64,000 nucleotides of DNA from Mytilus trossulus (GCF_036588685.1 NC_086380.1:75826001-75890000), one strand, 5' to 3'; numbered from the stretch's first letter, positions 15,251 to 56,858 are shown. The notes: generated by a model not told the origin, from the sequence alone. A program made the numbers and translations.

Positions 15251-17860
15251 TGTAATTGTAATTATATGTCAAGCGTGCCTAGTGCATAAAACTATACACA
15301 TGCAATGTCTTCAATAAGATTTGTGTATTGAATCGAATTCATTTATTTGTAGTTAAGATACTGTTTTGAAATAAAAGAAATAAAGCAAACAAATAATATA
15401 ATACCATACTATTCACGATCCGAGTGCGACACTTGACCACCGAACCATTTTGTTTTATGTCATCGACGTATCGGGGAGTATTACATTTTACAGTTATACG
15501 TCTCTACGTCCTTGCGTCCAAGAAACATTTTCGTTCACTTATTTTTAGTTTGCATCATCCAAGTGTTAGAGCATCATCAATATTAATTTGTGAAATTTAA
15601 TGACCCGGCTTCTTTGATATTCCTGTTTTGACAAGTGTTTGAAGGATCTCCGATTCGTACGAAAATAAGAAGAGGTCGACAAGAAGAAGTGCATAGTTCG
15701 TTACCATAGGATTGACGACAATTTGTTAAACAAGTCTACCTCCAAATAAAATAGATATATTGTCAAAAGAAAACTTGCTACGTTTATTTACGCTCTTTCT
15801 TTGAACGCTACTTGGATATTTTTAAAAGTTTATTGGCTTTTTTGAAATTTGTCTGTCTTTGAACTTGTCTTTGACCTTGTCTTTTACCTTGTATGTTACT
15901 GAAGTTTGTAATTGTATGTCTATGATTTCGTATTAATGACAACTGAAAAAATAATAGTATAGACTGAAAATCTACCTATGTTATTAAAAATCATGATATC
16001 TTTTTTTCTGCACTCAACATGCTTAATGTTCATATGGACCCTTTCGGCTTCACTTCCACTTTTACTCTGAGTACAGACAAACCTGTGTATCTGGAAAAAG
16101 ATAAATAAACATAAAATATATAGTTTGTTTTAAAAAAATTCAAAACTTAAATGGATTTTGCAGTCCACATGAACCTTGATAAAAAAAATATTGTAAGCTG
16201 TCTGTGTCAATAAATCCCTAAGAATATAAAACCGAAAAATATTCCTGTGCAGCCGGCATAATTATATATTGTTATCATCATTACAATTTTTCTATATACA
16301 AATCTAGCAATAAATAGTTTGATTTAAATATTGAAACTTCATATTTCATGATTTAAAATGTATTTAAATTGTGTGTTTATTTTTAACCAGGAAGTGTGCT
16401 TATTTTGTTATCAGCGCCACGTAATGTTTAAAATCATCATACATCACACAGGTGTTTTACTGTTGTCTTCAAGAACCAGAATTACTAGTTAAACAGTAGA
16501 ACCGTCGTGGTTTTATTCTTAATTAGAAGCTTTACGAAAATCAATCAGGTATGTAATCTAATTTTGTAATATGATTATGAATTATGAAGAGCTAAACTAG
16601 CTTAGGTGGATACCGTTAAAAGCGAAAGTAAATATTTTAACAATCCTTTGTTTATTCCGTTTATGTTAAGATAGTCACATGTTACTTTAAAAATATTCTG
16701 TTTTGTAAATAAATTAATTTGGTTTCAAATGGATATCTTTCTTTCTCTGATTCTTCTTTATGTAATCGATATTCAGGTAAAAATCACTGTTAAGAAAGTG
16801 CGAATCGTATCTTCAATAAGATTTGTGTATTGAATCGAATTCATTTATTTGTAGTTAAGATACTGTTTTGAAATAAAAGACATAAAGCAAACAAATAATA
16901 TAATACCATTCTATTCACGATCTGAGTGCGACACTTGACCACCGAACTGGTTTTTTTTATGTCATTGACGTATCGGGGAGTATTACATTTTACAATTGTA
17001 CGTCTCTACGTCCTTGCGTCCAACAAATATTTTCGTTAACTTATTTTTAGTTTGCATCATGCAAGTGTTAGAGCATCATCAATATTAATTTGTGAAATTT
17101 AATGACCCGGCTTCTTTGATATTCTTGTTTTGACAAGTGTCTGAAGGATCTCCGATTCGTACGAAAATAAGAAGAGGTAGAATATAAAACCGAAAAATAT
17201 TCCTGTGCAGCCGGCATAATTATATATTGTTATTATCATTACAATTTTTCTATATACAACTCTAGCAATAAATAGTTTGATTTAAATATTGAAACTTAAT
17301 ATTTCATGATTTAAAATGTATTTAAATTGTGTGTTTATTTTTAACCAGGAAGTGTGCTTATTTTGTTAACAGCGCCACGTAGTGTTTAAAATCATCATAC
17401 ATCACACAGGTGTATTACTGTTGTCTACAAGAACCATAATTACAAGTTAAACAGTAGAACCGTAGTGGTTTTATTCTTAATTAGAAGCTTTACGAAAATT
17501 AATCAGGTATGTAATCTAATTTTGTAATATTTTTTTTGATGAAGATCTAAACTAGCTTAGGTAGATACCGTTAAAACCGAAAGTAAATATTTTAAAAATC
17601 CTCTGTTTATTCCGTTTATGTTAAGATAGTCACATACTACTTTAAAAATATTCTGTTTTGTAAATAAACTAATTTGGTTTCAAATGGATATCTTTCTTTC
17701 TCTGATTCTTCTTTATGTTATCGATATTCAGGCAAAAATCACTGTTAAGAAAGTGCGAATCGTATCTTCAATAAGATTTGTGTATTGAATCGAATTTATT
17801 TATTTGTAGTTAAGATACTGTTTTGAAATAAAAGAAATAAAGCAAACAAATAATATAATA

Positions 17861-18325
17861 CAGTCCTTGGATGGTGTAAACTTCCCACTAACACCATACA
17901 CCATTACACCATACACCATACCCCATTACACCATACACCTTGTACCATTACACCATACACGTTACACCTTTGCACCATACACCTTACACTTTACACCATA
18001 CACCATTCCCCATTCTATCTACACGATCCGAAATTACCCATAATGCAATTAAATTTTAAATATTAAGATTTTTATTATGTTTATGCTAACAATCCAAAAA
18101 AATGAAATAAAAAAAAATTCGTTTGCAACCAATGAAAGGTCGTACATTATCATTCACACCATTCCCGATCGCACGTTACACAATCACACCATTCCTCATA
18201 CACCATTACACCATTCCCCTTACACCATACACCATAGCACCATACACCTTACACCTTTGCACCATATGCCATACACCATTACACCATACACGTTGTTTTG
18301 GGAAGTTTACACCATCCAAGGGCTG
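17861..18325. mobile_element. Tc1/mariner-type MITE with internal (TACACCA)-like simple repeats
   Basis: About 27-bp TIRs CAGTCCTTGGATGGTGTAAACTTCCCA and TGGGAAGTTTACACCATCCAAGGGCTG, TA TSD (17859-17860 and 18326-18327). Sister units show the empty site TAATATAATACCATACT. Confidence 0.92.
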
Positions 18326-18777
18326 TACCATACTATTCACGATCCGAGTGCGACACTTGACCACCGAAAGTTTTTTTTTTTTTATGTCATCAACGTATCG
18401 GGGAGTATTACATTTTACAATTGTACGTCTCAACGTCCTTGTGTCCAAGAAATATTTTCGTTCACTTATTTTTAGTTTGCATCATCCAAGTGTTAGAGCA
18501 TCATCAATATTAATTTGTGAAATTTAATGACCCGGCTTCTTTGATATTCTTGTTTTGACAAGTGTCTGAAGGATCGCCGATTCGTACGAAAATAAGAAGA
18601 GGTCGGTAAGAAGAAGCGCATATTTCGTTCCCATAGGATTGACGACAATTTGTTGAACAAGTCTACCTCCAAATAAAATAGATATATTGTCACAAGAAGT
18701 CTGGCTACGTTTATTTACGCTCTTTCTTTGAACGCTACTTGGATATTTGTAATAGTTTATTGGCTTTTTCTGTCTTT

Positions 18778-18880
18778 TACCTTGTCTTTGACCTTGTCTT
18801 TGACCTTGTCTTTGACCTTGTCTTTGACCTTGTCTTTGACCTTGTCTTTGACCTTGTCTTTGACCTTGTCTTTGACCTTG
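18778..18880. repeat. 12-bp minisatellite (GACCTTGTCTTT)n, copy number variable between units
   Basis: About 8 copies here, 1-5 copies in sister units (near 15860, 26430, 27690, 29195, 34830, 45735), and a derived longer unit at 46885-47005. Confidence 0.92.
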
Positions 18881-19375
18881 TATGTTGCTGAAGTTTGTAA
18901 TTGTATGTCTATGATTTCGTATTAATGACAAATAAAAAAAAATAGTAGCGTAGAATGAAAATCTACCTATGTTAATAAAAATCATGATATCTTTTTTTCT
19001 GCACTCAACATGCTTAATGTTCATATAGACCCTTCGGCTTCACTTCCAATTTTACTCTGAGTACAGACAAACCTGTGTATCTGGAAAAAGATAAATAAAA
19101 TTAAAATATATAGTTTGTTTTAAAAAATTCAAAACTTAAATGGATTTTGCAGTCCACATGAACCTTGATAAAAAAAATATTGTAAGCTGTCTGTGTCAAT
19201 AAATCCCTAAGAATATAAAACCGAAAAATATTCCTGTGCAGCCGGCATAATTATATATTGTTATTATCATTAAACTTTTTCTATATTCAACTCTAGCAAT
19301 AAATAGTTTGATTTAAATATTAAAACTTCATATTTCATGATTTAAAATGTATCTAAATTGTGTGGTTTTTTTTAA

Positions 19376-19543
19376 CCAGGAAGTGTGCTTATTTTGTTAA
19401 CAGCGCCACGTAGTGTTTAAAATCATCATACATCACACAGGTGTTTTACTGTTGTCTTCAAGAACCAGAATTACAAGTTAAACAGTAGAACCGTCGTGGT
19501 TATATTCTTAATTAGAAGCTTTACGAAAATTAATCAGGTATGT
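19376..19543 (+). promoter_or_regulatory. Putative proximal promoter and non-coding first exon of TRIM copy 1, ending in a splice donor
   Basis: CCAGGAAGTG (ETS-like, 19376), GCCACGT and CACAGGTG, then ATCAG|GTATGT with GT at 19538. Matching acceptor TTTTTTTAG| at 21024, 10 nt before the ATG. The same block lies only about 250 bp upstream of copy 3. No transcript evidence. Confidence 0.6.
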
Positions 19544-21034
19544 AATCTAATTTTGTAATATGATTATGAATTATGAAGAGCTAAACTAGCTTAGGTAGAT
19601 ACCGTTAAAACCGAAAGTAAATATTTTAACAATCCTTTGTTTATTCCGTTTATGTTAAGATAGTCACATGTTACTTTAAAAATATTCTGTTTTGTAAATA
19701 AATTAATTTGGTTTCAAATGGATATCTTTCTTTCTCTGATTCTTCTTTATGTAATCGATATTCAGGCAAAAATCACTGTTAAGAAAGTGCGAATCATATC
19801 TATGTTAGAAAAGTGCGAATCGATAAATGATCGATATCGCTTGTTGTAGGGTATATATTTTACTTTTATAAAATATAGGTAGATTGTAGTTATTAGAAAA
19901 GAAGATACCAGTGGGGCAGTCAAACTTTCAACTGACAACGCCATGACTAAAACAGAGACATAATATCAGACAAATAACAGAACACAATACACATGATACA
20001 CAAAATAGAAAACTAAAAACAAAGTAACACAAACCCGACCAAACATTTGGGGTGATCTCAGGTGGTCCAACAGGGTGAGCAAATCCTGCTCCACAATATC
20101 AAATGTTCGGAATGTTATACACAATGGTTAGTACCACAATATACAGATATACTTTGATTTGCGTAATGAATAAATTACAATTAGCATTATTAGGAAAACG
20201 ATCAAATCATTAGAATATGCTTATTGCCAATTCTACTAGGTAAATTATGTCTCTCGTCTATTTTATTCCTTTTCTGTTCTGGTTGAAAGACAATAAAAAT
20301 CAAAACCAAGGAGTAAACAAAGTCTCACAAAACCAAACGACATTTACATCAACAGTTATAAATAATAAATAAGAAACAACACGAACTCCAATAAAAAATG
20401 GGAGTAAAATCAGGTGTTCCGGAAGGATAAGCATTTCCTGCACCGTATACGGCACCCGTCGTGTTATTTCTTTGTTCAGTTCGGTAATGATGAAAAGTTT
20501 AATGACTGAGGAACATCATCACCCCATATTTATTGGTATTTGTACAATGTAGTTATAAGAAGATGTGGAATGAGTTTTCATTAGCATGATTAGACAACTT
20601 TCCATCCAAGTCACAATTTGTAATAGTAAACCATTATAGGTCAATGCACGGTCTTCAACACGGTGGCGTGGCTCACACTTAACAGTTAGCACTAAAAGGC
20701 CCATAAAAGGCTAGTTTACCTTGTTTTCAAACATGCAACACTTACATTTATGCATGTTTGAGTTTTTGTGTATTTAATGTCGTGTTTGAATATACTGAAC
20801 ATCTCAAAATGTGACTATGGATGGTTTGACTCTGGTAGAACAAGTCATATATCATTTCGATTAATTACAAGTTGCGTTTTAAAAAAAAATGAGATTAAAT
20901 TTAAATTCTAGATTGTCAAATGTTAATTGCTTATACTGCTTAGAAAAACTTGTATACAATACAGAACATGAAGAAAAATCTTTTGATTTAGAGTATAATA
21001 AAACCACACCTCTCCTTTTTTTAGAAGTTTTCTT

Positions 21035-22684
21035 ATGGCATCGACTAGTTTATGTGATCCTTGTTCCGAAGCTGACAAGTCTTCAACAGCAACAAAGTAT
21101 TGCTCTGACTGTGAAGAAAGACTTTGTACAGACTGTGATGAATCACATTGCAGATTCAAAGCCTTCAAATCTCACCATGTTATCGACCTGTCGTCCATCG
21201 GATCCAATAAATGTATGCCTGCGATGAAAAACTGCAATGTCCATTCAGAGATGCTTTTGGATTATTACTGCACAGACCATGAGATCGTATGCTGTAGAGC
21301 CTGCATATCTAATGAACACAGGCTTTGTCAGAACGTTCTCCCATTGGAACTGGCCTCGAAGGATGTAAAAAAGTCTGCACTGTTTAACGATGTTATGGAA
21401 GACATGACGCATCTTATTACAACATTGAATGCTTTAGACAATAACAGACAGTCAAACTTTCAATCAATGGAGGAATCCAAATCAACAATAACAAAGAAGA
21501 TCCGAGCAGTGAAATCCAAATTTTTGAAACAAATTGACGATTTGGAGCGTGAATTAACGACCACTTTGTCATCTCTCCAACGAAAACATGAAATGGAAAT
21601 CAACAAACAAAAGCAAGAAATATCGCAAGTCTTGGTCAATGTTATAGAAAATAAAAACGAGATGGATTTTTTGAGAGATCATGGATCTAAGAATCAGCTC
21701 TTCATATTCCTTCGCCAACAAGTAACAAATATTCATAGCGCCGAGGCCAAGATTCAGCAGATAGTATCCGATTCACAAGAATTCAATATAACCTTTGACG
21801 AAAAGAAAGATGTTAAGCTTGAGTCTCTCGGGTCACTGTCAGAGTATGTCCAACCATGTCAAGTTCAATACAAACCAAAAAAATTTCAACAAGCCCAGAT
21901 AAAGGCGGAACCAATGAAAAATATTCTAGGGTTTGAGAAGGATACAGTATTAAAACTTAATACTAATGTGGTAAAACGTCTTATTTGTGTGTCAGTGACA
22001 GATAATAATAAGCTGTTCATTACTAATGCAGTACCATCCAATAACAAAATCTATGTTTACAGAGACTGTGAAGATTATGAGACAGAGATAGCATTTTCCT
22101 CCACACCTTATTGTGTCGCTTTGATACCTGGTACGGACAGAGCTGTTATTACCCTACCTAACGAGAATTCTATACAATTTATAAACACTACAAAGATGAC
22201 AAAGGACAACAAAGTAAATGTTGGATTTACATGTTATGGTATTACTGCTGGACGTGACAGAATTATCGTTGGCGGTTATGATGGTATTATCAAAATATTA
22301 AACACCAATGGGGCAATTCTAAAGGCAACCCAGCATGGATCTTATTGTATTTGCTTCATAGCATACGATGGTATTCATGATCATTTGATTGTTAGATGTT
22401 ATGGTAAACTCCTTTGTATCAAGTTAGATGGAACACTAGTATACAGTAAGGACGTTTCAGGGGTAGCAGGTTTAACACTTGATCGACAGAGGAACATTTA
22501 TTTTGGTGGTTTTTCAACTCACAATATACAAAGAATATCATCAGATGGAGACAACTGTGAAGAAATGCTGAACAAAGACAATGACATTGACCATCCATTG
22601 GGAATGTGTTTTAACAATGACTTCACAAAACTCTTTGTTATTAATAACGATGGTAAATCTGTTTGTGTATACAAATGCAAGTAA
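21035..22684 (+). CDS. RING-less TRIM-like protein (B-box1, B-box2, coiled coil, NHL/beta-propeller), copy 1, intact, 549 aa
   Basis: B-box1 CDPC...YCSDCEERLCTDCDESH...HH; B-box2 CNVH...YYCTDHEIVCCRACISNEH; long heptad region; C-terminal repeats such as PYCVAL, CYGITAG, GLTLDRQRNIYF and HPLGMCFN. Single uninterrupted ORF. Confidence 0.93.
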   Translation: MASTSLCDPCSEADKSSTATKYCSDCEERLCTDCDESHCRFKAFKSHHVIDLSSIGSNKCMPAMKNCNVHSEMLLDYYCTDHEIVCCRACISNEHRLCQNVLPLELASKDVKKSALFNDVMEDMTHLITTLNALDNNRQSNFQSMEESKSTITKKIRAVKSKFLKQIDDLERELTTTLSSLQRKHEMEINKQKQEISQVLVNVIENKNEMDFLRDHGSKNQLFIFLRQQVTNIHSAEAKIQQIVSDSQEFNITFDEKKDVKLESLGSLSEYVQPCQVQYKPKKFQQAQIKAEPMKNILGFEKDTVLKLNTNVVKRLICVSVTDNNKLFITNAVPSNNKIYVYRDCEDYETEIAFSSTPYCVALIPGTDRAVITLPNENSIQFINTTKMTKDNKVNVGFTCYGITAGRDRIIVGGYDGIIKILNTNGAILKATQHGSYCICFIAYDGIHDHLIVRCYGKLLCIKLDGTLVYSKDVSGVAGLTLDRQRNIYFGGFSTHNIQRISSDGDNCEEMLNKDNDIDHPLGMCFNNDFTKLFVINNDGKSVCVYKCK

Positions 22685-22789
22685 ATGGTTTTTTTTGTGA
22701 AACAATATGAATACTCTTAACTATATTATGTAATTTATCGTGTTACTTAAATATACAATAAGTACACACTTCTTATTTTATATTATCTG

Positions 22790-25700
22790 TTTAATAATCG
22801 CTTTTTATTTGCGGTTACGAGGAAATAATATTCGGAGAAAAATAAGTAAAGTCCAAACAAAGACAAAATAAACAAAAAATAATATAAAAATTGAGAATAA
22901 AAGTGGAAAAAATAAATACAAATAGCGTACATAAATAGCACGCACAATCAAACAATACAAGCAAACAAATGTTAAACAAGTATTTACAAAGTCTTCGAAA
23001 AAAAGATAAAAAAATCAAAGTAGAAATGAACAATTTAAACTCATTTACAAAGAAAAATAAAATACCACAAAAAACAACACAATTCATCTGCACTCAAAAT
23101 ATTTAAATTGTTACTTTAATTTATAAACCACATTTATTCTGGATTTGTATTCAGTATCTGTTGTATAGTAGTATCATGTTTGGTGAAAATCAATTTTTTT
23201 TACCACATACAATGGGAGATCAAGCGTGCGTGTACGAGGTTATACTGTCGGATTTGTCTGGCGTCAACTTTGTTCCGAAAGATCTATGAAACAATATGAC
23301 GATTATGGTCGCACTCATTTACCCGATTCTGGATTATATTATAATGGTATGTATGCTCTGCAAACTAATCAATCTTTTCCTACCTTATCAGACAATTATG
23401 ATACCGTAAACTCGGATGAATATTATCACGGATTGCCAAATTATTCAACACAAGTATCGATTGAAAACATAAAATCACTATCAAATGAACATATACAAAA
23501 CGGTATAGATGAAGAAAACGTGTGTGTCAAGTGTACTTTAATTTTAGTTTCTTGTGTACAATTTGGAAATTAGTATGGCGTTCATTATCACTGAACTAGC
23601 ATATATTTGTTCAGGGGCCAGCTGAAGGACACCTCCGGGTGCGGGAATTTCTCGTTACATTGACGACCTGTGGGTGACCTTCTGCTGTTGTTTTTTGTAT
23701 GGTCGGGTTGTTGTCTCTTTGATACATTCCCCATTTCCATTCTCAATTTTATGTGTGTTAATTTGTGTTTTGCTATTCCTTGTAGTTGTCATTCTATTGT
23801 ATTCAACGACATAATTAATGTTATATTAATTGATATCAAATAAGGTAATAATACGATGATAATCAAATGGTTGCCTACGCGAAATGTGCGTAATTTTTAT
23901 TTTCATTTTTTGTGTGTTATTTGACAGAAGATAACATTCAAAACCAAGGAGTAAACGAAGACTCACAAAACCAAAAGACGTTTACATCAACAGTTATAAA
24001 TAATAAATAAATAAAAACACGAAATCCACTAAAAACATATGACGTGGTGCTGTACTTAAATATCCCGTCTTTTACATTGTGTTATTGTGCTATTGTAAAT
24101 GTTTTGTATTCCTGTCTTTCATTTTGTTTATGTGTCATATGTGCTTTGTTTACATGTCTTTTTTGTTTCTTTGTTACTTTTTGTAATATCATAGTGATAA
24201 AGATTATAACCCAATGTTGAATGCTATACCACTATTTTGATATTTTAACCTATGATGTCTGTTTTTTTCACTCATTGTTGTCAATATGATATATATTATC
24301 TGCATAAGAATATACCTGTACCAAGGCAGGAATTTGACAGTTGTTATCCATTCATTTGATGTGTTTAAGCTTTTGTTTTTTTCCCATTTGATTAGGGTCT
24401 TTCTGTTTTAACGTTTGCATTTTCATGGGAGTTCAGTATTTTTGCGATTTTCTTTTTACATGTAAAATTGTAAGATGTCGGCCGAAGAATGCCAATACGA
24501 TCAGTTTTCACATTACATATGATTTGTAAAAAACATTTTTTACTAAACCGAATAAATGACGGGTTATATTTTGTTTACTTCTGTAGCATATACATATCGG
24601 TGAGGTATATACATTTAATGATTTGGAACATCGCCAGTTTGTCAGTTTGTCAGTTTAGTGAACATGTTGAATTGTTAAAAATTTTAAAACCGGATATTGA
24701 AAAAGATAACATCGTATTCACATACATTGGGAGGAGTATTATTAAAATTTAAAAGTAAATAAACTTGAAAGATATTGTGCTTTTTTAGATGCACATTGAC
24801 ACTTGAATAATTCAGTCAGTAGTCTCCTTTCAAATTGAAATGCTAGGATTGCGAAGACTTCAATTGAATACTTTTGAAGCTAGATATCTTATTATATTTA
24901 TTGAATAAAACTATAGTACAAACGTTTGAATATAAATTTCTCAGTGGATTATTGTAAACAACTTTTCATACTGTATATTTTGGTATTTATTACTTTTTAA
25001 TTTCAATAAAACATTTTTTGTTGGTTATATATTTTGTTGATTTTCGGAAAGTAACTATAGAACATTATAGACGTATGGATATGTAAAGTTATTATGCACA
25101 AACCCACGATGAAAAGTAATAATCTGTACAAAATGATAACATGTTCATGGCATATATGTGTACAGAGCCACTTCATATGTATCATAGAAGCACAAAAGGG
25201 TACATGAACAAAGCACATTAGCAAAAATGAAAGCCAAGAATACGAGCATTACCATAGAACAATAACACAATAACAGGTGTACAAGTGCCGAGCTACGTCA
25301 AATGAATATCAACAAAAACAGACTAAACATAAAATTATTATTAATAAATATATATAAAAAATAGTATACAATCTCAACTTCATGACCAACTAGTATTTGT
25401 GAAGTTGATACGGAATATTTATCAACAAGGTCGATGAACCTTTTTAGAAAAAATACAAGACGTTCTTTGATATACTCCTGGTTTATCAACTTTCTTCTCA
25501 GATACTTGTGACGTTTTACAAAGTCTGAGTAAGAGTTGTAAGATCCTGGATATCAAATAATTTAAAAAATGTTTATCTCATATGCAGGTGGCGTTGGTAT
25601 ATTGCTACTAAGGTGGGGAAATTGATAATTTTAAAATCAAAATCGTCTCCTTTGCCATAGATTATGGTACTGAAATGATCGTGTATATCAATTCCGAGAA

Positions 25701-25880: not shown

Positions 25881-28800
25881 TCTCAAATAATATTTGAGTA
25901 TTTAATCGAATTCATTTGTTTGTAGTTAAGATACTGTTTTGAAATAAAAAAAAAAAAAACCAAACAACTAATATCATTCCATATTATTCACGATCCGATT
26001 GCGACACTTGACCACCTAACTTTATTTTTATGCCATCGACGTATCAAAGAGTATTACATTTTACAATTGTACGTTTTACGTCCTTGCGTCCAATTTTTTA
26101 AAAATTTCGTTCATTTATTATAGTTTGCATCATTCAAGTGTTAGAACATCATTAATATTTATTAGTGAAATTAAATGATCTGGCTTCTTTGTTTTTTGTT
26201 TTGTTTTGACAAGTGTCTGAAGGATCTCCGATTCGTATGAAAATAAGAAGAGGTCGGAAAGGAGAGCGCATAGTTCGTTCCCATAGGATAGACGACAATT
26301 TGTTGAACAAGTCTACCTCCAAATAAAATAGATGTCAAAAGAAAACTGGCTACGTTTATTTCCGCTCTTTTTTTTAACGCTACTTGAATATTTTTAATAG
26401 TTTATTGGCTTTTTTGAAATTTGTCTGTCTTTGACCTTGTCTGTTACTAAAGTTTGTAATTGTATGTTTATCAATTCGTTTTAATGACAAATGAAAAAAA
26501 CATATCGTAAAATGAATATAAAATCTACCTATGCTATTAAAAATCATGATATCTTTTTTTCTGCACTCAACATGCTTAATGATCATATGGACCCTTTGGC
26601 TTCACTTCCAATTTTACTCTGAATACAGACAAACCTGTGCAACTGGAAAAAGATAAATAAAATTAAAATATATAGTATGTTTTAAAAAATTCAAAACTTA
26701 ATTGGATTTTGCAGTCAACATGAACCTTAATAGAAAAAAATATTATAAGCTGTCTGTGTCAATATTCCTGTGCAGCCGGCATAATTATATATTGTTATCA
26801 TCATTACAATTTTTCTATATACAACTCTAGTAATAAATAGTTTGATTTAAATATTGAAACTTCATATTTCATGATTTAAAATGTATTTAAATTGTGTGTT
26901 TATTTTTAACCAAGAAGTGTGCTTATTTTGTTAACAGCGCCACGTAGTGTATAAATCATCATACATCACACAGGTGTTTTACTGTTGTCTTCAAGAACCA
27001 GAATTACAAGTTAAACAGTAGAACCGTCGTGGTTTTATTCTTAATTAGAAGCTTAACGAAAATAAATCAGGTATGTAATCTAATTTTGTAATATTTTTTT
27101 TTATGAAGAGCTAAACTAGCTTAGGTAGATACCGTTAAAACCGAAAGTAAATATTTTATCAATCCTTTGTTAAACACTTTATTCCGTTTATGTTAAGATA
27201 GTCACATGTTACTTTAAAAATATTCTTTTTAGTAAATAAATTAATTTGGTTTCAAATGGATATCATTCTTTCTTTGATTCTTCTTTATGTAATCGATATT
27301 CAGGCAAAAATCACTGTTAAGAAAGTGCGAATCGTATCTTCAATAAGATTTGTGTATTGAATCGAATTTATTTATTTGTAGTTAAGATACTGTGTTAGAG
27401 CATCATCAATGTTAATTTGTGAAATTTAATGACCCGGCTTCTTTGATATTCTTGTTTTGACAAGTGTCTGAAGGATCTCCGATTCGTACGAAAATAAGAA
27501 GAGGTCGACAAGAAGAAGCACATATTTCGTTCCCATAGGATTGACGACAATTTGTTAAACAAGTCTACCTCCAAATTAAATACATATGTAGTCAAAAGAA
27601 AACTGGCTACGTTTATTTACGCTCTTTCTATGAACGCTCTTTGGATATTTTTAAAAGTTTATTGGCTTTTTTTAAATTTGTCTGTCTTTGACCTTGTCTT
27701 TGACCTTGTCTTGACCTTGTCTTTGACCTTGTATGTTACTGACGTTTGTAATTGTATGTCTATGATTTCGTATTAATGACAAATGAAAAAATAAGGGCGT
27801 AGAATGAAAATCTACCTATGTTATTAAAAATCATGATATCTTTTTTTCTGCACTCAACATGCTTAATGTTCATATGGACCCTTCGGCTTTACTTCCAATT
27901 TTACTCTGAGTACAGACAAACCTGTGTATATGGAAAAAGATAAATAAAATTAAAATATATAGTTTGTTTTAAAAAATTCAAAACTTAAATGGATTTTGCT
28001 GTCCACATGAACCTTGATAACAAAATATTGTAAGCTGTCTGTGTCAATAAATCCGTAAGAATATAAAACCGAAAAATATTCCTGTGCAGCCGGCATAATT
28101 ATATATTGTTATCATCATTACAATTTTTCTATATACAACTCTAGCAATAAATAGTTTGATTTAAATATTGAAACTTCATATTTCATGATTTAAAATGTAT
28201 TTAAATTGTGTGTTTATTTTTAACCAGGAAGTGTGCTTATTTTGTTAACAGCGCCACGTAGTGTATAAATCATCATACATCACACAGGTGTTTCACTGTT
28301 GTCTTCAAGAACCAGAATTACAAGTTAAACAGTAGAACCGTCGTGGTTTTATTCTTAATTAGAAGCTTTACGAAAATTAATCAGGTATGTAATCTAATTT
28401 TGTAATATTTTTTTTTATGAAGATCTAAACTAGCTTAGGTAGATACCGTTAAAACCGAAAGTAAATATTTAAAAAATCCTCTGTTTATTCCGTTTATGTT
28501 AAGATAGTCACATGCTACTTTAAAAATATTCTGTTTTGTAAATAAACTTATTTGGTTTCAAATGGATATCTTTCTTTCTCTGATTCTTCTTTATGATATC
28601 GATATTCAGGCAAAAATCACTGTTAAGAAAGTGCGAATCGTATCTTCAATAAGATTTGTGTATTGAATCGAATTCATTTATTTGTAGTTAAGATACTGTT
28701 TTGAAATAAAAGAAATAAAGCAAACAAATAATATAATACCATACTATTCACGATCCGAGTGCGACGCTTGACCACCGAACTTTGTTTTTTTTTTATGTCA

Positions 28801-31800
28801 TCGACGTATCGGGGAGTATTACATTTTACAGTTATACGTCTCTACGTCATTGCGTCCAACAGATATTTTCGTTCGCTTATTTTTAGTTTGCATCATCCAA
28901 GTGTTAGAGCATCATCAATATTAATTTGTGAAATTTAATGACCCGGCTTCTTTGATATTCCTGTTTTGACAAGTGTCTGAAGGATCGCCGATTCGTACGA
29001 AAATAAGAAGAGGTCGACAAGAAGAAGCGCATAGTTCGTTCTCTTGGGAATGACGCAATTTGTTAAACAAGTCTACCTCCAAATTAAATACATATGTAGT
29101 CAAAAGAAAACTGGCTACGTTTATTTACGCTCTTTCTTTGAACGCTACTTGGATATTTTTAAAAGTTTATTGGCTTTTTTTAAATTTGTCTGTCTTTGAC
29201 CTTGTCTTTGACCTTGTCTTTGACCTTGTCTTTGACCTTGTCTTTGACCTTGTATGTTACTGAAGTTTGTAATTGTATGTCTATGATTTCGTATTAATGA
29301 CAAATGAATAAATAATAGCGTAGAATGAAAATCTACCTATGTTATTAAAAATCATGATATCTTTTTTTCTGCACTCAACATGCTTAATGTTCATATGGAC
29401 CCTTCGGCTTCACTTCCAATTTTACTCTGAGTACAGACAAACCTGTGTATCTGGAAAAAGATAAATAAAATTAAAATATATAAACGTTACGCTCAATGTT
29501 GGTGACGTTTTCTGATTTCAAGTACCTCTGACCAATAATCAGCTTAAAATAAGAAAAATACCGGGAATATCAAATGTTTTTTTGTGTTAAAATCTTTGGA
29601 GCACTTAAAACATTATTTTTACGGTGGCTCATTAGTTTTTATTAACTTTTGTCAATAAGCTTTTCAAAAACAAACTAGACAAATCATATGTTTTTGCGTG
29701 TAGACGGGTAACATACTAATATTGTTTTTGAGGGTTCCTCCTAATTTTGGATACCCACAAGTAAATAAAATATAAAAATTGTATACTAGTTGGAAGAGGA
29801 ACGTTAGGTCTTTGTGATGTCATATTTGTATAACTCAATTGACACCATTTTCGAATCGAGTAGACCTTGGAAAAAGCCATTTCAGCTTGTAGACACTGAA
29901 GGAAAAATATAAGCCCTTTGCGGCATAACAGATGAGAATCGATCGATAGCGAGATTATTTTTCATCAAAGTCTTTATATCAAATATCATTACGTAAAACA
30001 AACTTGGAAAATGCTTTAAAAACATTGATTCCCAACGAATTCAATGAGAACGTCGACATCATAATCAAAATCAAAGCCCCGAAAAACACTGTCACAACAA
30101 CGTTTAAAAAAACATGCTCTACTTGAAATTATCAATACCGAGTAAAAATATGTAAAGCATGTTATCTTGTCAGAAAATACTACATATCCGGTAATATAGA
30201 ACATCTGAACCGCATTTATTCATATCGCAGTCTCTTTTTTAGCATTACATAAAATCATATTTTGCATATGAGTCCCCACAGGGCTCCCGTCACAAAACTT
30301 TTACCTAACGTTTAACGTTAGTAATTTCGATGGTTTTTAAAGAAAACGAAGAAAAAAAATTGTGCATTTTAAAACGGAGAAATGAAGCCAATATGATAAA
30401 TTCCGAATAAAAAAGAAACGGTAGTATGCATTCGTTTATATTTTTGTCAATTTATTTCGATTACTAATGTATTGGAAGAGTGTCTACCAAAATGTCACAA
30501 AAATGGCATCTTCAATTTTTTCCTAAAATACTGGAAACAAGTTGTTACAAATCTTTAGAAATAAGTGAAAACTGTATAATTAAGAAGAAGATTTAAGCGA
30601 TAATCGGAAATTCTCAAACCGAAGGAACATTTCAATATAAATAGGATAAAGATTAATGTACAAATTATCAAAATACAGTGGTCACATGGTGGTCTACCAA
30701 AATGTCACAGCGTCGCTTATTTTGACGTTTTTGACGTTCACCATTACATGTAACCGTTTTTTGCATTATTGCGTTTTTGAAACGTATTTATTTTATTATA
30801 AAAACATCTAAAACTTAAATTCGGAATAAACGATTTATTTCAAATGGTTTTTTTTTCTTTCATGTCATTTTTTGTTAAAGCTAATGAAACCGAAACCCAA
30901 CAACAACAAAATTATACATGTATTCAAAATTAATATCTTCAGTGGAGATAATCGCCTCAAAGTACAACTAGCATATCATACATACTGGATATTCGTATCA
31001 ATCAAAGTATTGAGTAAGAAAGTTGAACGTTGTATTATACATTATTGTGTTATTACATACATGTATACGAATACAGACACACGGACAAATATCGATATGT
31101 AAACAATCAAATACGGAGATGTTATACATACAGCTAATTGGATATTAATATTTCAAAACATAGCGGTGTTAGGTATTTTTAAGTTGACTTGTCCAATAGT
31201 AAGACTTAAGTTCTAATGACGAAGACACATGCAATTTTACGCCATTCATTGGTATCCTAGTAAAATCTGTAGCCGAATTTGGATATACACAAATAATTAT
31301 GAATTATTTTGAAAGTTGTCATAGAAAGGGTCCACAGTATGCTGAAGGTGGACTTTTGAAAAACCAAGCAGATATTGTCGTTATATACACGGACAATTTC
31401 AGATATGTTCGGATGTATAACTGTTTCAATTCACGCAGTCACGATTAACAACACCATGGTCATATGCTTGCAAACGAAGGATTTTTAAATATGTAGAAGA
31501 AATTCCTATTGAGATAGACAATCATTTAAACCAATAAAGGGTATACGGACCATACATCGAGTAGAAACAAAAAATCTACAAACGGTACTAGTTCGAACCG
31601 TTTTGTGTTATTGCGACGGGTGCCTTGAGCGTGACTATTGTTTGTTTACTGATTCTAGTTGGCATTTCGTTGGAAGTCAAAGTAGACCGGTCAAATTTTT
31701 GCAGTTGTATGTGATGAGGAGGAAAATGTTCTATTCCTCCTTATAGCTGCATCGGGGAGTCATAATTATGTTATCAGGAGAAGAAACTAATGAGTGGAGG

Positions 31801-34800
31801 TCAACTTTCGGCATTCTTTTTATTTAGGGGTCACACCACTTATAGAGCATTACTAATATATTTAAAAACCCCAAATCTTTCCTTAACCAATATACCTTAC
31901 CGTAACACTCGCCCTAACTATAAAACCTAACCCTTACCTAAAATTTCCTCTGACCTAACAATTACAATGAATATGAACCCTACCTCTAAAGTATAGGGAC
32001 CCTTAAAGTAAAAGAAGGCCCAACTTTCCCTGAAGGAAGATTAATGGACATTATTTCATAAAAAAAAAACCATCACGGTTTACAGGACAGTCTTTGGAAA
32101 AATCAAAAAGCAATTGTCCGAAGAGCTTCCGTATTGAATTTGTATGTATGCCAAGACAATATTTGAAAAGAAATACGCTCGTTTTAACCGAAGAAGAGAA
32201 TAAAAATATTTTGGAATGTGTTAATTTATGTTAACTGCTTCATTAATAATCATTTGACATTTATATTGTGTCACGGCTTCGTAATGTGTCACGACATAGG
32301 ATGAGAGCACTACATCCTGTGCCGTGACATTACGTTAGTGTCATGTGATTTTCCTCGAGTAAATAAAATTGAGAATGGAAAAGGGAATGTATCAAAGAGA
32401 CAACCACCCGACCATAGGAAAAACAACAGCAGAAGGTTATCAACAGGTCTCAAATTTAACGAGAAATTCCCGCACCCTGAGGCGTCCCGTTTTCAGCTGG
32501 CCCCTAAAGTTTTCAATTTTGCATTTCTCTTAAATATCACAAACAAAGTACATTTAATACAAGATTTATCTATCGCGAGAAAAAAGATAAATTACGCGTC
32601 ATACATTTCTAAATCCCTTCTCTTAATATCAATTGGAGAAATAAAATAAAATAAAAAAAATCTTCAATGTAATAGATATTATTGCTTTGGACAATATTGG
32701 ATCAATAGAGAGAAAATCACATGACACTAAAGTACATCTTTACTTAAATTGTATTCTAAGGAACAGAAAATCATTTCGTTGAGAAATAAAGAATGTGGCA
32801 AATGAGAACAATTAAATAAGACATCATCAACGACAAAAACAGGTAAATGAGAGAGAGAAAAAAATAAATACAAAACAAATACAGAACAAAGTAAAACATA
32901 AAATATACAATTGAGAATTGAAACGGGATATGTCAACAACCCGACGAATTAAAGAGAAGACAGCAGTCGAAGGCCACCAATGCAGTGATAAATTCCTGCA
33001 CCCGGAGGCAAGCCTTTTATAACCACCCCATTCCCAATAAATTCAAACTTGACAATAAAATACTGCTATTGTAGAATTTTGACAGATATTAAAGTCTTAC
33101 AATCATTGAAAATACGCAGACGCTAATTTGTTTAACTACTTTGAGGTTGATATAAAAAAAAATTATACCGGACCTCCCTACAACCATATTTAAAGTTAGA
33201 ATAAAAAGATCATGATTAAAAAAAATCTAAAATTGTAAAGCGTTTCTCCTCTTCAGTACTATTTTCAAAATAAAAAAAATCTTGTTTTTTTTCAACCAGT
33301 AAAAATTATTTTAAAACAAATTGTGCATGAATGCATACGCGTGGCTTTGAATGTAGCATAAATCCCACAATTGATTTTCCGTCCTTTTCACAAAACACCA
33401 TACGCATTGATCTTATATTTCCTTTGTCAAGAGGTCACCTGGCACAAACCAATATCTCCTTTCATTAACTGAAAACCAAGTGTCTAACGAATATACTGGA
33501 CGTCAATATTACAAAACGTCTATATAATATGATTTTGACGTTAACATACGACGTTACCAAAAATGACACCAACATCGAGCGTAACGTCATAGTTTGTTTT
33601 AAAAAAATCAAAACTTAAATGGATTTTGCAGTCCACATGAACCTTGATGAAAAAAATATTGTAAGCTGTCTGTGTCAATAAATCCCTAAGAATATAAAAC
33701 CGAAAAATATTCCTCTGCAGCCGGCATAATTATATATTGTTATCATCATAACAATTTTTCTATATACAACTCTAGCAATAAATAGTTTGATTTAAATATT
33801 GAAACTTCATATTTCATGATTTACAATGTATTTAAATTGTGTGTTTATTTTTAACCAGGAAGTGTGCTCATTTTGTTAACAGCGCCACATAGTGTATAAA
33901 TCATCATACATCACACAGGTGTTTTACTGTTGTCTTCAAGAACCAGAATTACTAGTTAAACAGTAGAACCGTCGTGGTTTTATTCCTAATTAGAAGCTTT
34001 ACGAAAATTAATCAGGTATGTAATCTAATTTTGTAATATTTTTTTTATGAAGAGCTAAACTAGCTTAGGTAGATTCCGTTAAAACCGAAAGTAAATATTT
34101 TATCAATCCTTTGTTTATTCCGTTTATGTTAAGATAGTCACATGTTACTTTAAAAATATTCTGTTTTGTAAATAAATTAACTTGGTTTCAAATGGATATC
34201 TTTCTTTCTCTGATTCTTCTTTATGTAATCGATATTTAGGCAAAAATCACTGTTAAGAAAGTGCGAATCGTATCTTCAATAAGATTTGTGTATTGAATCG
34301 AATTCATTTATTTGTAGTTAAGATACTGTTTTGAAATAAAAGAAATAAAGCAAACGAATAATATAATACCATACTATTCACGATCCGAGTGCGACACTTG
34401 ACCACCGAACCTTTTTTTTTTTTTATGTCATCGACGTATCGGGGAGTATTACATTTTACAATTGTACGTCTCTACGTCCTTGCGTCCAACAAATATTTTC
34501 GTTAACTTATTTTTAGTTTGCATCATCCAAGTGTTAGAGCATCATCAATATTAATTTGTGAAATTTAATGACCCGGCTTCTTTGATATTCTTGTTTTGAC
34601 AAGTGTCTGAAGGATCGCCGATTCGTACGAAAATAAGAAGAGATCGGCAAGAAGAAGGGCATATTTCGTTCCCATAGGATTGACGACAATTTGTTGAACA
34701 AGTCTACCTCCAAATAAAATAGATATATTGTCAAAAGAAAACTTGCTACGTTTATTAACGCTCTTTCTTTGAACGCTACTTGGATATTTTAAAAAGTTTA

Positions 34801-35773
34801 TTGGTTTTTTTTGAAATTTTTCTGTCTTTTACCATGTCTTTGACCTTGTCTTTGAGCTTGTCTGTTACTGAAGTTTCTAATTGTATGTCAATGATTTCGT
34901 ATTAATGACAAATGAAAAAATAATAGCGTAGAATGAATATAAAATCTACCTATGTTATTAAAAATCATGATATCTTTTTTTCTGCACTCAACATGCTTAA
35001 TGTTCATATGGACCCTTCGGCTTCACTTCCAATTTTACTCTGAGTACAGACAAACCTGTGCATCTGGAAAAAAGATAAGTAAAATCAAAATATATATTAT
35101 GTTTTAAAAAAATCAAAACTTAACTGGATTTTGCAGTCCACATGAACCTTGATAGAAAAAATATTATAAGCTGTCTGTGTCAATAAATCCCTAAGAATAT
35201 AAAACCGAAAAATATTCCTGAGCAGGCGGCATAATTATATATTGTTTTTATCATTACAATTTTTCTATATTCAACTCTAGCAATAAATAGTTTGATTTAA
35301 ATATTGAAACTTCATATTTCCTGATTTAAAATGTATTTAAATTGTGTGTTTATTTTTAACCAGGAAGTGTGCTTATTTTGTTAACAGCGCCACGTAGTGT
35401 TTAAAATCATCATACATCACACATGTGTTGTCTTCAAGAACCAGAATTACAAGTTAAACAGTAGAACCGTCGTGGTTTTATTCTTAATTAGAAGTTTTAC
35501 GCAAATTAATCAGGTATGTAATCTAATTTTGTAATAATTTTTTTTATGAAGAGCTAAACTAGCTTAGGTAGATACCGTTAAAACCGAAAGTAAATATTTT
35601 AACAATCCTTTTTTTTATTCCGTTTATGTTAAGATAGTCACATGTTACTTTAAAAGTATTCTGTTTTGTAAATAAATTAATTTGGTTTCAAATGGATATC
35701 TTTCTTTCACTGATTCTTCTTTATGTAATCGATATTCAGGCAAAAATCACTGTTAAGAAAGTGCGAATCGTAT
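25880..35773 (+). repeat. Tandem array 2: four copies of the ~1.5-kb unit upstream of TRIM copy 2, the third interrupted by a 4.1-kb transposon
   Basis: Units start at about 25880, 27337, 28643 and 34273; donor sites CAG|GTATGT at 27071, 28385, 34016 and 35514. Confidence 0.92.
29483..33588 (+). mobile_element. Decayed TIR DNA transposon with a Sola2-like transposase remnant
   Basis: 28-bp TIRs ACGTTACGCTCRATGTTGGTGWCRTTTT (3 mismatches), ATA duplicated on both sides, empty site in sister units. Remnant at about 31270-31390, EFGYTQIIMNYFESCHRKGPQYAEGGLLKNQAD, resembles the H-G-K-G-x-x-D-x-x-GG motif I associate with Sola2. The boundaries are solid; the superfamily is tentative. Confidence 0.75.
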
Positions 35774-37007
35774 CTATGTTAGGAAAGTGCGAATCGTTTA
35801 AATGATCGATATCGCTTGTTGTAGGGTATATATTTTATTTTTATAAAATATAGGTAGATTGTAGTTATTAGAAAAGAGGGTCGAAAGATACCAGTGGGAC
35901 AGTTAAACGTTCAACTGACAACGCCATGACTAAAACAGAGACATAATATCAGACAAATAACAGAACACAATACACATGATACCCAAAATAGAAAACTAAA
36001 AACAAAGTAACACAAACCCGACCAAACATTTGGGGTGATCTCAGGTGGTCCAAAAAGGTGAGCAAATCCTGCTCCACAATATCAAATGTTCGGAATGATA
36101 TACACAATGGTTAGTACCACAATATACTGATATACTTTGATTTGCGTAGTGAATACATTACAATTAGCATTATTAGGAAAAGGATCAAATCATTAGAATA
36201 TGCTTATTGCCAATTTTACTAGGTAAATTATGTCTGTTGTCTATTTTATTCCTTTTCTGTTCTGGTTGAAAGACAATAACAATCAAAACCAAGGAGTAAA
36301 CAAAGTCTCACAAAACCAAACGACATTTACTTCAACAGTTATAAATAATAAATAAGAAACAACACGAACTCCAATAAAAAATGGGAGTAAAAACAGGTGT
36401 TCCGGAAGGATAAGCATTTCCTGCACCGTATACGGCACCCGTCGTGTTATTTCTTTGTTCAGTTCGGTAATGATGAAAAGTTATTATGACTGAGGAACAT
36501 TATCACCCCATATTTATTGGTATTTGTACAATGTAGTTATAAGAAGATGTGGAATGAGTTTTCATTAGCTTGATTAGACAACTTTCCATCCAAGTCACAA
36601 TTTGTAATAGTAAACCATTATAGGTCAATGCACGGTCTTCAACACGGTGGCGTTGCTCACACTTAACCGTTAGCACCAAAAGGCCCCTAAAAGGCTAGTT
36701 TACCTTGTTTTCAAACATGCAACACTTACATTTATGCATGTTTGAGTTTTTGTGTATTTAATGTCGCAGTTGAATATACCGAACATCTCCAAAATGTGAC
36801 TATGGATGGTTTGACTCTGGTAGTTTAAGTCATATATCATTTCGATTAATTACAAAAAAAAATGAGATTACGTTTAAATTCTAGGTTGTCAAATGTTAAT
36901 TGCTTATACTGCTTAGAAAAACTTGTATACAATACAGAACACGAAGAAAAATCTTTTGATTTAAAGTATTATAAAACCACACCTCTCATTTTTTTAGAAG
37001 TTTTCTT

Positions 37008-55230: not shown

Positions 55231-55289
55231 AAATTCCTCCAGAATTGTAGCTGGATCTGTATCTGCTGTTAGAGCCAGACTTTTGAATT

Positions 55290-56842: not shown

Positions 56843-56858
56843 CTGAAAAATATAAAAT

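What the first reader, a model, noticed from the sequence alone, without database searches (positions are those of the whole stretch)
15308..37000. Tandem amplification of the promoter and first exon (not the CDS) in front of TRIM genes: 3 and 4 candidate leaders feeding one coding exon
Seen: the ~1.5-kb unit looks like junk but contains a conserved block (CCAGGAAGTG, GCCACGT, CACAGGTG ... ATCAG|GTATGT). Donor GTs lie at 16549, 17507 and 19538 (copy 1) and at 27071, 28385, 34016 and 35514 (copy 2). Copy 3 has one block, with its donor at 47576, only 245 nt from an acceptor 10 nt before the ATG, which identifies the block as a likely 5'UTR exon. The block survives in all 7 units, whereas the large deletions and insertions fall in other parts of the unit. 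Inference: this is a promoter-copy-number 'accordion' in which several start sites splice onto one coding exon, tuning expression of a putative immune gene without duplicating the protein.
Basis: partly seen in the sequence, partly recalled or inferred. Interest (0 to 1): 0.8.

Follow-up and report, generated by a model that had tools for sequence, protein, structure and literature searches.

The report
Tandem 5' leader exons before mussel TRIM-like genes
In a mussel (Mytilus trossulus) cluster of fast-evolving TRIM-like genes, a 1.5-kb piece holding the promoter region and a 158-base non-coding first exon is repeated 2-4 times in front of single coding exons; RNA data show the exon is really spliced to the coding exon and hint that the repeats are spliced one after another, but any effect on expression is unproven.

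Summary
All eight ATCAG|GTATGT donors sit at the stated coordinates, inside about 95%-identical blocks. The blocks lie in tandem units of 1502, 958 and 2034 bp (gene 1) and 1.3-1.5 kb (gene 2, split by a 4.1-kb transposon).

The unit is not a dispersed repeat. Whole copies occur only in the megabase TRIM-like cluster on contig C8 and on contig C65. One microhomology junction is shared by all internal boundaries.

No unit's nearest relative lies in its own array (0 of 20). The array therefore predates the latest gene duplications and is inherited by at least six paralogues carrying 2-4 units.

RNA-like contigs from two studies carry a GT..AG junction from the leader end to 21025, so the block is a true, ATG-free 5'UTR exon. 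Their 30 leader bases are identical in units 2 and 3, so the unit used cannot be assigned.

A 188-nt contig (30 + 158) starting at CAG|GAAGTG best fits leader-to-leader serial splicing. This is inferred, not read.

Arrays also precede broken genes: gene 2 has a stop at codon 24. Evidence of constraint is marginal.

The closest known case is Drosophila hydra, with nine tandem first exons. Expression tuning is untested.

The parts
15308..16809 (+). Gene 1 array, unit 1 (distal), 1502 bp
   Evidence: Self-BLAST, 94-96% to other units. Boundary junction ...GTATCT|TCAATAAG.
16810..17767 (+). Gene 1 array, unit 2, 958 bp (short type, lacks about 544 bp equivalent to 15677-16220)
   Evidence: The same short-type junction is seen in an independent DNA run, X15 (joint 18603->16221).
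17768..19801 (+). Gene 1 array, unit 3 (proximal), 2034 bp, with a 464-bp ACACCAT-rich insert at 17862-18325
16391..16548 (+). Leader exon of unit 1 (158 nt). Carries a unit-specific ATG (CGTAATG) and a C at -7 from the donor.
   Evidence: Run X1 has low depth (2.9) in bin 16401-16600.
17349..17506 (+). Leader exon of unit 2 (158 nt, ATG-free)
   Evidence: The X4 junction contig was placed 17506|21025, but its 30 leader bases are the same as in unit 3.
19380..19537 (+). Leader exon of unit 3 (158 nt, ATG-free). T-rich tract plus CAG|G at its 5' edge, CAG|GTATGT at its 3' edge.
   Evidence: X4 contig covers 19377-19537 and has 27 more letters upstream. X1 junction contig is 19537|21025.
19350..19358 (+). 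TATA-like box. It reads TATTTAAAT in most units and TATCTAAAT here, and lies 28-30 nt before the exon start.
   Evidence: That it acts as a promoter element is inferred.
19538..21024 (+). Intron 1 of gene 1 (GT..AG). It holds high-copy transposon fragments at about 20200-20800.
   Evidence: Joint skipping 1487 nt in X1. Unique intron bins have zero depth in the RNA-like runs but are covered in DNA run X15.
21025..22684 (+). Single coding exon of gene 1. ATG at 21035. Intact 549 aa with two B-boxes, a coiled coil and a C-terminal propeller-like domain, and no RING.
26914..27070 (+). Gene 2 array, leader exon 1 of 4 (157 nt). Its 5' edge reads CCAAG.
28228..28384 (+). Gene 2 array, leader exon 2 of 4 (157 nt)
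29484..33587 (.). 4.1-kb non-autonomous element with 28-nt terminal inverted repeats, inserted between units 2 and 3 of the gene 2 array
   Evidence: pair I2, 89% complementary. No long ORF.
33859..34015 (+). Gene 2 array, leader exon 3 of 4 (157 nt)
35364..35513 (+). Gene 2 array, leader exon 4 of 4 (proximal, 150 nt). An 8-bp deletion creates an ATG.
36998..38655 (+). Coding exon of gene 2. ATG at 37008. A 2-bp deletion gives a TGA at codon 24, and the rest of the frame stays open.
47431..47575 (+). Single leader exon of gene 3 (145 nt, 13-nt deletion, 95% identical to gene 1's leader over aligned bases)
47822..49483 (+). Coding exon of gene 3, a pseudogene with many stops and frameshifts

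Best explanation
Origin (shown from sequence). One microhomology-mediated tandem duplication copied a 1.5-kb segment. It held about 1.24 kb of upstream sequence, the non-coding exon 1 and the first 263 nt of intron 1 of a RING-less B-box/coiled-coil/propeller gene in Mytilus trossulus. Unequal crossing-over then made arrays of 2-4 units. These arrays were inherited and shuffled as the gene cluster itself expanded.

Unit anatomy (shown from sequence). Each unit keeps four features:
- a TATA-like box about 30 nt before the exon;
- an ATG-free exon of about 158 nt;
- a strong donor, CAG|GTATGT;
- a T-rich tract plus CAG|G at the exon's 5' edge that can serve as a 3' splice site.

Use in RNA. It is shown that the leader's donor is spliced to the acceptor 10 nt before the ATG. 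It is inferred from contig geometry that transcripts starting in an upstream unit splice its leader to the next unit's leader. The mRNA would then carry one to several leader copies in series before the coding exon.

What remains open. Whether every unit fires as a promoter is not known. Whether unit number changes mRNA or protein output is not known either. The arrays may be a tolerated by-product of a recombination-prone cluster.
For: Donors and blocks sit at the stated places.

The unit is specific to the cluster. There are at least 40 scored copies of the leader block, all on C8 at 75.35-76.37 Mb or on C65 at 1.83-2.04 Mb. Full-length units occur only there.

All internal boundaries share one junction...GCGAATCGTATCT|TCAATAAG..., with TCT microhomology.

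RNA evidence:
- The unique intron bins 19601-20200 and 20801-21000 have zero depth in X1, X2 and X4, but are covered in DNA run X15.
- GT..AG joints 19537|21025 (X1) and 17506|21025 (X4) each carry exactly 30 leader bases, which is k-1 for these contigs.
- X4 record 27 is 188 nt. Its bases 1-161 match 19537 back to 19377, and 27 further letters lie upstream.
- Those 27 letters do not match the window, although 19369-19376 is identical in all units.
- 30 + 158 = 188. The alignment ends at the CAG shared by the leader end (AATCAG) and the site CCAG|GAAGTG.
- X1's depth (1.22 = 10.1 x 24/200) also places its contig start at 19377.

Sequence features of the copies:
- The exon is ATG-free in 27 of 30 copies, where about 3 ATGs are expected from composition. 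The 160-nt flanks carry 2 and 4.5 ATGs.
- All 30 copies keep an AG|GT donor.
- 26 of 30 keep TTTATTTTTAACCAG|G.

Age of the array: 0 of 20 units have their nearest neighbour in their own array, and proximal, second and distal units pair across arrays. Units within an array differ by 4-5%, against 3.3% for the introns of gene 1 versus gene 2.

Conservation: the leader exon is 92-95% identical in paralogues whose flanks are 82-87% identical.
Against: - The 27 upstream letters of the X4 contig were never seen. The tool did not list a leader-to-leader joint, perhaps because a 27-letter side is too short, so serial splicing is a deduction.
- The RNA runs are labelled RNA only by guess. They come from other individuals or species (37-49% of 31-mers shared) and could derive from any paralogue.
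- RNA contigs read T at 19502, where the reference proximal unit has its private A.
- No transcription start site is mapped.
- Arrays precede broken genes: gene 2 has a stop at codon 24, array D has 6 stops, and C65:1872000 has 1 TGA.
- The constraint test is marginal. In non-proximal units the core promoter has pi 0.020 against 0.046 in unique flanks (MWU p=0.017, Fisher p=0.07). The exon shows no significant reduction.
- The leader RNA has no unusual fold, with z = -0.4.
Confidence: 0.6

Rival explanations
1. Only the proximal unit is used. The upstream units are neutral relics of unequal crossing-over in a recombination-prone tandem gene cluster. They are too young (4-5% diverged) to have decayed.
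For: - Arrays stand before pseudogenes as well as intact genes.
- Three of 30 leaders have acquired an ATG.
- The reduction in diversity is marginal against unique flanks.
- Junction contigs cannot be assigned to a unit.
- Single-unit paralogues have intact CDSs.
Against: - The X4 contig has 27 non-genomic letters upstream of CAG|GAAGTG, and its length of exactly 30+158 nt implies that a leader is used as an internal exon. That requires transcription from upstream.
- X1 has a low-depth contig placed best on unit 1's leader.
- All 30 donors are intact.
- The core-promoter region is least variable in the non-proximal units, with pi 0.020 against 0.049 in proximal units.
Confidence: 0.22
2. Each unit is an independent promoter, and its leader splices directly and exclusively onto the coding exon, as mutually exclusive alternative first exons like those of Drosophila hydra. 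Copy number would then set total output.
For: - Each unit keeps the TATA-like box, the exon and the donor.
- Leader-to-CDS junctions exist.
- There is a precedent in hydra, where at least 4 of 9 tandem exon 1s act as start sites (PMC1904467).
Against: - The good 3' splice site at each leader's 5' edge and the X4 188-nt contig point to inclusion of downstream leaders rather than skipping.
- No junction could be assigned to a distal donor.
- Nothing links unit number to expression.
Confidence: 0.13
3. The leader is always an internal exon fed by an unrecognised exon 0 further upstream, or the leader-to-leader signal is a back-spliced circular RNA. In either case the array would hold no extra promoters.
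For: - The CAG|G site is conserved even in single-unit paralogues.
- The 27 unseen letters could belong to any exon ending in CAG.
- A 158-nt cycle in a k=31 graph is also what a single-exon circle would give.
Against: - No RNA-like contig marks an exon 0 within 16001-19376, apart from low-depth pieces in high-copy repeat parts.
- The contig starts exactly k-1 bases before the junction. That is expected if the preceding 30-mer is the leader end, which is shown to be a branching node by the leader-to-CDS contigs.
- The X4 contig is not split at 19377, which argues against transcripts running in from contiguous upstream DNA.
Confidence: 0.05

Closest known systems
Drosophila melanogaster hydra: nine tandem alternative first exons (Chen et al. 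2007, PMC1904467; reviewed in PMC9013439)
   Same: - Recurrent tandem duplication of exon 1 with its upstream region, but not the rest of the gene.
- Repeat or transposon sequence sits inside or beside the units.
- It is a fast-evolving gene.
- Several copies keep donors that join a common downstream exon.
   Different: - In hydra the first exons are used in a mutually exclusive way, and at least 4 were shown by RACE to be start sites. Here start sites are unmapped and the leaders seem to be spliced in series.
- Here the array is shared by at least six paralogues of a large gene cluster and predates their split.
- The exon here is purely non-coding and the coding part is a single exon.
Tandem exon duplications in untranslated regions (Ivanov and Pervouchine 2022, PMC9013439)
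   Same: Homologous exons repeated in tandem within a 5'UTR. That paper describes such duplications as frequent in UTRs.
   Different: The surveys there cover human, fly and worm and emphasise mutually exclusive choice. This case is in a mollusc, its unit also carries the promoter region, and it is inherited across a family.
Spacer promoters in the rDNA intergenic spacer (for example PMC1215480)
   Same: Tandem copies of a core promoter upstream of one transcription unit. Copy number varies and has been proposed to modulate output.
   Different: Those are Pol I promoters without exons or splicing. No homology, only an analogy.
RING-less B-box/coiled-coil/NHL (Brat-like, 'TRIM71-like') gene arrays of Mytilus
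   Same: The genes fed by the leaders belong to this cluster. NCBI names close paralogues TRIM71-like or TRIM45-like. Earlier scan notes describe the megabase array and its hypervariable propeller.
   Different: Those descriptions concern the proteins. The repeated 5' leader and promoter module was not part of them.

Membership tests
Tandemly duplicated first exon/promoter arrays (hydra type) | Homologous copies of exon 1 plus upstream sequence in head-to-tail array upstream of one downstream exon | tested here: met
   Self-BLAST and alignments. There are 3 units before gene 1 and 4 before gene 2.
Tandemly duplicated first exon/promoter arrays (hydra type) | The copy's donor is spliced to the common downstream exon in RNA | tested here: met
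   GT..AG joints from the leader end to 21025 in X1 and X4. Shown for the leader type, but not assignable to one unit.
Tandemly duplicated first exon/promoter arrays (hydra type) | More than one copy acts as a transcription start site | tested here: inconclusive
   Only contigs were available, and these cannot show starts. The indirect hints are the 188-nt X4 contig and the low depth on unit 1 in X1.
TRIM (tripartite motif) proteins | N-terminal RING finger | tested here: not met
   Pfam finds only B-box domains. The protein starts directly with B-box 1 at residue 6.
TRIM (tripartite motif) proteins | B-box(es) followed by a coiled coil | tested here: met
   PF00643 at residues 64-96 and an ANCHR-like B-box at 6-49. 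Residues 10-175 align to the TRIM28 B-box/coiled-coil structures 6h3a and 6qaj, E=6e-6.
TRIM-NHL subfamily | C-terminal NHL-repeat beta-propeller | tested here: inconclusive
   No Pfam NHL hit at E<=0.01. NCBI names paralogues TRIM71-like. No structure prediction was run here.
Spliced-leader (trans-splicing) RNA gene arrays | Short leader exon (about 16-50 nt) in tandem genes that are independent of their targets and used by many mRNAs | tested here: not met
   The exon is 158 nt. Copies occur only upstream of paralogues of one cluster. There is no Rfam match in 15000-21100.
Dispersed transposable element or satellite | Copies scattered over the genome independent of gene context | tested here: not met
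   All scored copies of the block and of the full unit lie in C8:75.35-76.37 Mb and C65:1.83-2.04 Mb. Only sub-fragments of the unit are high-copy: 1611 first-look candidates and high DNA depth.

The most novel reading that the evidence does not exclude
The leader array is a heritable, copy-number-variable control module for a diversifying receptor-like gene family. Each added unit would supply both an extra start site and an extra 158-nt 5'UTR cassette that is spliced in series. Unit number, 1-4 among paralogues and perhaps variable among individuals, would then set transcription and the length of the 5'UTR. That in turn would set translation or stability, without touching the hypervariable protein.
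Probability: 0.15. Interest if true: 0.7.

Novelty: new member of a known kind. Interest (0 to 1): 0.4.

Why it matters
Mussels carry very large, fast-evolving families of candidate innate-immune genes, and how these are regulated is almost unknown. This finding gives the first anatomy of the 5' end of one such family. It consists of a conserved ATG-free leader exon and a single coding exon. In one sub-clade the promoter-plus-leader module is repeated 2-4 times and has been passed on through several gene duplications.

If the repeats are used, in series or as alternative starts, they offer a simple natural system to ask how promoter and 5'UTR copy number affect output. If they are not used, they show how readily non-coding 5' modules are duplicated and tolerated in recombination-prone gene clusters. 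They also warn annotators that such arrays create multi-leader transcript models.

Tried and rejected
Explanations rejected:
- Assembly artefact. Units differ by 3-6% and carry private indels and a transposon insertion. Six arrays show positional orthology. An independent DNA run holds the short-unit junction.
- Dispersed transposon or satellite.
- Spliced-leader RNA gene or another known RNA family. There is no Rfam hit at E<=1, and the leader fold is not unusual, z = -0.4.
- The - strand motif hit at 13076, which is a chance match.
- Recent independent amplification in each gene. 0 of 20 units have their nearest neighbour in their own array.

Tests that led nowhere or were blocked:
- Assigning junction contigs to units failed, because the 30 leader bases are identical in units 2 and 3.
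- The diversity tests for purifying selection came out marginal.
- The full-unit tree is a mosaic and not interpretable clade by clade.
A protein search of the genome served instead.
Orthologous loci in M. edulis and M. californianus and a Logan transcript could therefore not be inspected.
- The joined leader-leader and leader-CDS sequences were not searched anywhere.


Full report
WHAT THE WINDOW IS

The window is G000:C8:75826001-75890000 of a 1.3-Gb genome. Protein hits on the same 80,675,551-bp contig are named Mytilus trossulus, and close paralogues are annotated 'E3 ubiquitin-protein ligase TRIM71-like / TRIM45-like'.

Gene 1 (CDS 21035-22684) is an intact single-exon ORF of 549 aa. It has two B-boxes and no RING. 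Its B-box/coiled-coil part aligns to TRIM28 structures.

Earlier notes of this scan describe the same megabase cluster as RING-less B-box/NHL genes with a hypervariable propeller. My own comparison of genes 1 and 2 agrees. The propeller part is 84% identical, while the introns are 97% identical.

CHECKING THE OBSERVATION

Every stated donor is there. ATCAG|GTATGT places the donor G at 16549, 17507, 19538, 27071, 28385, 34016, 35514 and 47576. The motif is far above chance, with 11 hits against 1.6 expected.

The surrounding 400 nt align at about 95% among the seven units of genes 1 and 2, and at 83% for gene 3.

Self-BLAST defines the units:
- 15308-16809, 1502 bp;
- 16810-17767, 958 bp, with an internal 544-bp deletion;
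- 17768-19801, 2034 bp, with a 464-bp ACACCAT-rich insert.

In gene 2 the donor spacings are 1314, 5631 and 1498 bp. The long one is explained by a 4.1-kb element with 28-nt terminal inverted repeats at 29484-33587.

The acceptor lies 10 nt before the ATG in all three genes.

- Gene 2, the gene with four leaders, has a 2-bp deletion that puts a TGA at codon 24.
- Gene 3, the gene with one leader, is a pseudogene with many stops.

WHAT THE UNIT IS

It is not a dispersed repeat. At least 40 scored copies of the leader block all lie on C8 at 75.35-76.37 Mb or on the 4.2-Mb contig C65 at 1.83-2.04 Mb. All full-length units lie there as well.

Only sub-fragments of the upstream part are high-copy. 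This shows as 1611 first-look candidates and as DNA depth in the thousands over 17001-17200 and 17801-18800.

All internal unit boundaries share one junction...GCGAATCGTATCT|TCAATAAGATT.... It joins intron position +263 to a point 1.24 kb upstream of the exon, with 3-4 nt of microhomology. I read this as one founding duplication that was then expanded by unequal crossing-over.

Other arrays with about 1.5-kb spacing exist in the cluster:
- four units at C8:76175561-76180088;
- three units at C8:76083709-76087081;
- four units at C65:1835566-1839553;
- two units at C8:75800346/75802411.

A profile search finds a single, more diverged leader before further paralogues, for example C8:75774216 and C8:75947350. 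It also finds an older partial duplicate before the gene at C8:75936036.

AGE AND DYNAMICS

None of the 20 units in six arrays has its nearest relative in its own array. Proximal units pair with proximal ones (C4-A2-E4, F4-D3). Second units pair with second ones (B2-C2-F2-D2), and distal units with distal ones (C1-F1-A1-E1), at 97-98% identity. Within an array the identity is 95-96%.

The introns of genes 1 and 2 differ by 3.3%. The multi-unit state is therefore older than the latest gene duplications. It was inherited, and units were later lost, gained and exchanged. The full-unit tree is a mosaic.

This speaks against a picture of rapid gene-by-gene expansion. It is still compatible with slow variation in copy number, from 1 to 4.

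RNA EVIDENCE (the single call allowed; contigs only)

Runs X1, X2 and X4 are RNA by the tool's guess, and they behave as RNA. They cover the CDS but have zero depth in the unique intron bins 19601-20200 and 20801-21000. The large run X15 covers those bins at single-copy depth.

X1 and X4 come from different studies and different coded organisms. Each has one contig with a GT..AG joint from the leader's last base to 21025. This proves that the block is a 5'UTR exon spliced to the coding exon.

The tool placed the joints at 19537 (X1) and 17506 (X4). Each contig holds only 30 leader bases, and that 30-mer is identical in units 2 and 3 and in 15 of 30 genome copies. The unit used is therefore not known.

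THE SERIAL-SPLICING INFERENCE

X4 record 27 is 188 nt long and lies on the - strand. Its bases 1-161 match window 19537 back to 19377, and 27 more letters lie upstream of 19377.

I checked the orientation rule against two other records. For record 5, the joint side agrees. For record 19, its 29 loose letters lie 'behind' 18078, as the rule predicts.

The alignment stops at the C of CAG (19377), although 19369-19376 is identical in all units. The contig therefore truly departs from the genome there.

The sequence at that point is TTTATTTTTAACCAG|GAAGTG, a good 3' splice site. The leader ends in ...AATCAG, so a leader-to-leader junction would share exactly those three letters.

The length fits as well. 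The 30 bases (k-1) of the leader end plus the 158-nt exon make 188 nt. The contig ends at the leader's last base, which the leader-to-CDS contigs show to be a branching point.

X1's depth in bin 19201-19400 (1.22 = 10.1 x 24/200) places its contig start at 19377 too.

I conclude, as an inference at about 70%, that leaders are spliced to the next leader. That requires transcription from an upstream unit.

The X4 contig is not broken at 19377, so no transcripts seem to run in from the contiguous upstream DNA. This fits a start site at about the exon's 5' edge, 28-30 nt after the TATA-like TATTTAAAT.

I did not see the 27 letters, and the tool listed no such joint. I did not search any joined exon-exon sequence.

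SEQUENCE SIGNS OF USE

- The exon has no ATG in 27 of 30 copies. About 3 ATGs are expected from composition, and the 160-nt flanks carry 2 and 4.5 per copy. This fits a 5'UTR exon.
- The three exceptions include unit 1 of gene 1 and the proximal unit of gene 2.
- All 30 copies keep an AG|GT donor.
- 26 of 30 copies keep the acceptor-like tract unchanged.
- Diversity in promoter plus exon is 0.032, against 0.054 in the rest of the unit.
- The same contrast holds in non-proximal units alone, 0.026 against 0.053.
- Against adjacent unique flanks only the core promoter of non-proximal units stands out, 0.020 against 0.046 (MWU p=0.017, Fisher p=0.07). The exon does not. I treat this as suggestive only.
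- In older paralogues the exon is 92-95% identical while the flanks are 82-87%.
- The leader RNA has no unusual fold and no Rfam match.

ARRAYS AND GENE STATE

- Two units: intact CDS at C8:75804215.
- Three units: intact CDS (gene 1).
- Four units: intact CDS at C8:76181896.
- Four units: stop at codon 24 (gene 2).
- Three units: CDS with six stops at C8:76089088.
- At least two units: CDS with one TGA at C65:1872000.
- Single units: intact CDSs at C8:75612058, 75623936 and 75640928.

Arrays are thus not tied to working genes.

COMPARISON WITH WHAT IS KNOWN

Tandem duplication of exon 1 together with its promoter is known. Drosophila hydra has nine tandem alternative first exons, and at least four of them are start sites (PMC1904467). 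Tandem exon duplications are reported to be frequent in UTRs (PMC9013439). Repeated spacer promoters in rDNA are an analogy for copy-number tuning (PMC1215480).

This case is a new member of that kind, in a mollusc gene family. It has two particular features. The array is inherited across paralogues, and the leaders are probably included in series rather than chosen exclusively.

VERDICT

The 5'UTR-exon reading and the 'promoter plus exon 1 but not CDS' anatomy are right. Multi-unit use is likely, but in a different form (serial splicing) and not proven. The expression 'accordion' is untested and is weakened by the arrays in front of pseudogenes.

LIMITS

Noticed in passing
window 37008-37080: Gene 2 has a 2-bp deletion (TTGCTCTGAC becomes TTGCTGAC) that gives a TGA at codon 24. 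Many M. trossulus and M. edulis paralogues are annotated as 477-480 aa proteins that would start at Met73 of the 549-aa form. N-terminal truncation that removes B-box 1 may therefore be recurrent in the family.
   Followed up: partly
window 29484-33587: A 4.1-kb insertion with 28-nt terminal inverted repeats (ACGTTACGCTCAATGTTGGTGACGTTTT, 89% complementary) and no long ORF. It is probably a non-autonomous DNA transposon and splits the gene 2 leader array.
   Followed up: partly
window 21901-22684 versus 37872-38655: The propeller-coding part is only 84% identical between genes 1 and 2. The introns are 97% identical and the B-box/coiled-coil part is 95.5%. This agrees with the earlier notes on diversifying selection in this cluster.
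   Followed up: partly
window 18771-18881, 29191-29253, 46881-47008: A 12-mer microsatellite, TGTCTTTGACCT, lies inside the units and has a different copy number in each (9.2, 5.2 and about 10 copies). A 7-mer ACACCAT array at 17891-18291 is private to unit 3 of gene 1.
   Followed up: no
window 54887-57980 (- strand): Two ORFs of 287 and 251 aa. The first has weak matches to the phage-integrase SAM-like domain and to the RNase H-like RVT_3 domain. It looks like a DIRS/Crypton-type tyrosine-recombinase retroelement fragment.
   Followed up: no
window 5667-8614: A Harbinger/PIF-type DDE transposase ORF (PF13359, E=2e-34) lies next to a MADF-domain ORF on the opposite strand.
   Followed up: no
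window 12281-12699: A 30-bp minisatellite with 14 copies at 83% match.
   Followed up: no
C8:75932001-75933146 (extended coordinates 106001-107146): A more diverged paralogue (CDS at C8:75936036) has one full leader and, about 900 bp downstream, a second copy that keeps only the last 100 nt or so of the exon plus the donor. This is an older or independent partial duplication of the same module.
   Followed up: partly
window 26761-26764: This is a mosaic boundary. Upstream of it, the distal unit of gene 2 is only 84-86% like the other units and resembles the gene 3 type. From the conserved CCTGTGCAGCCGGCATAATT element onward it is 95% like them. That suggests a recombination or gene-conversion breakpoint just before the promoter block.
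   Followed up: no
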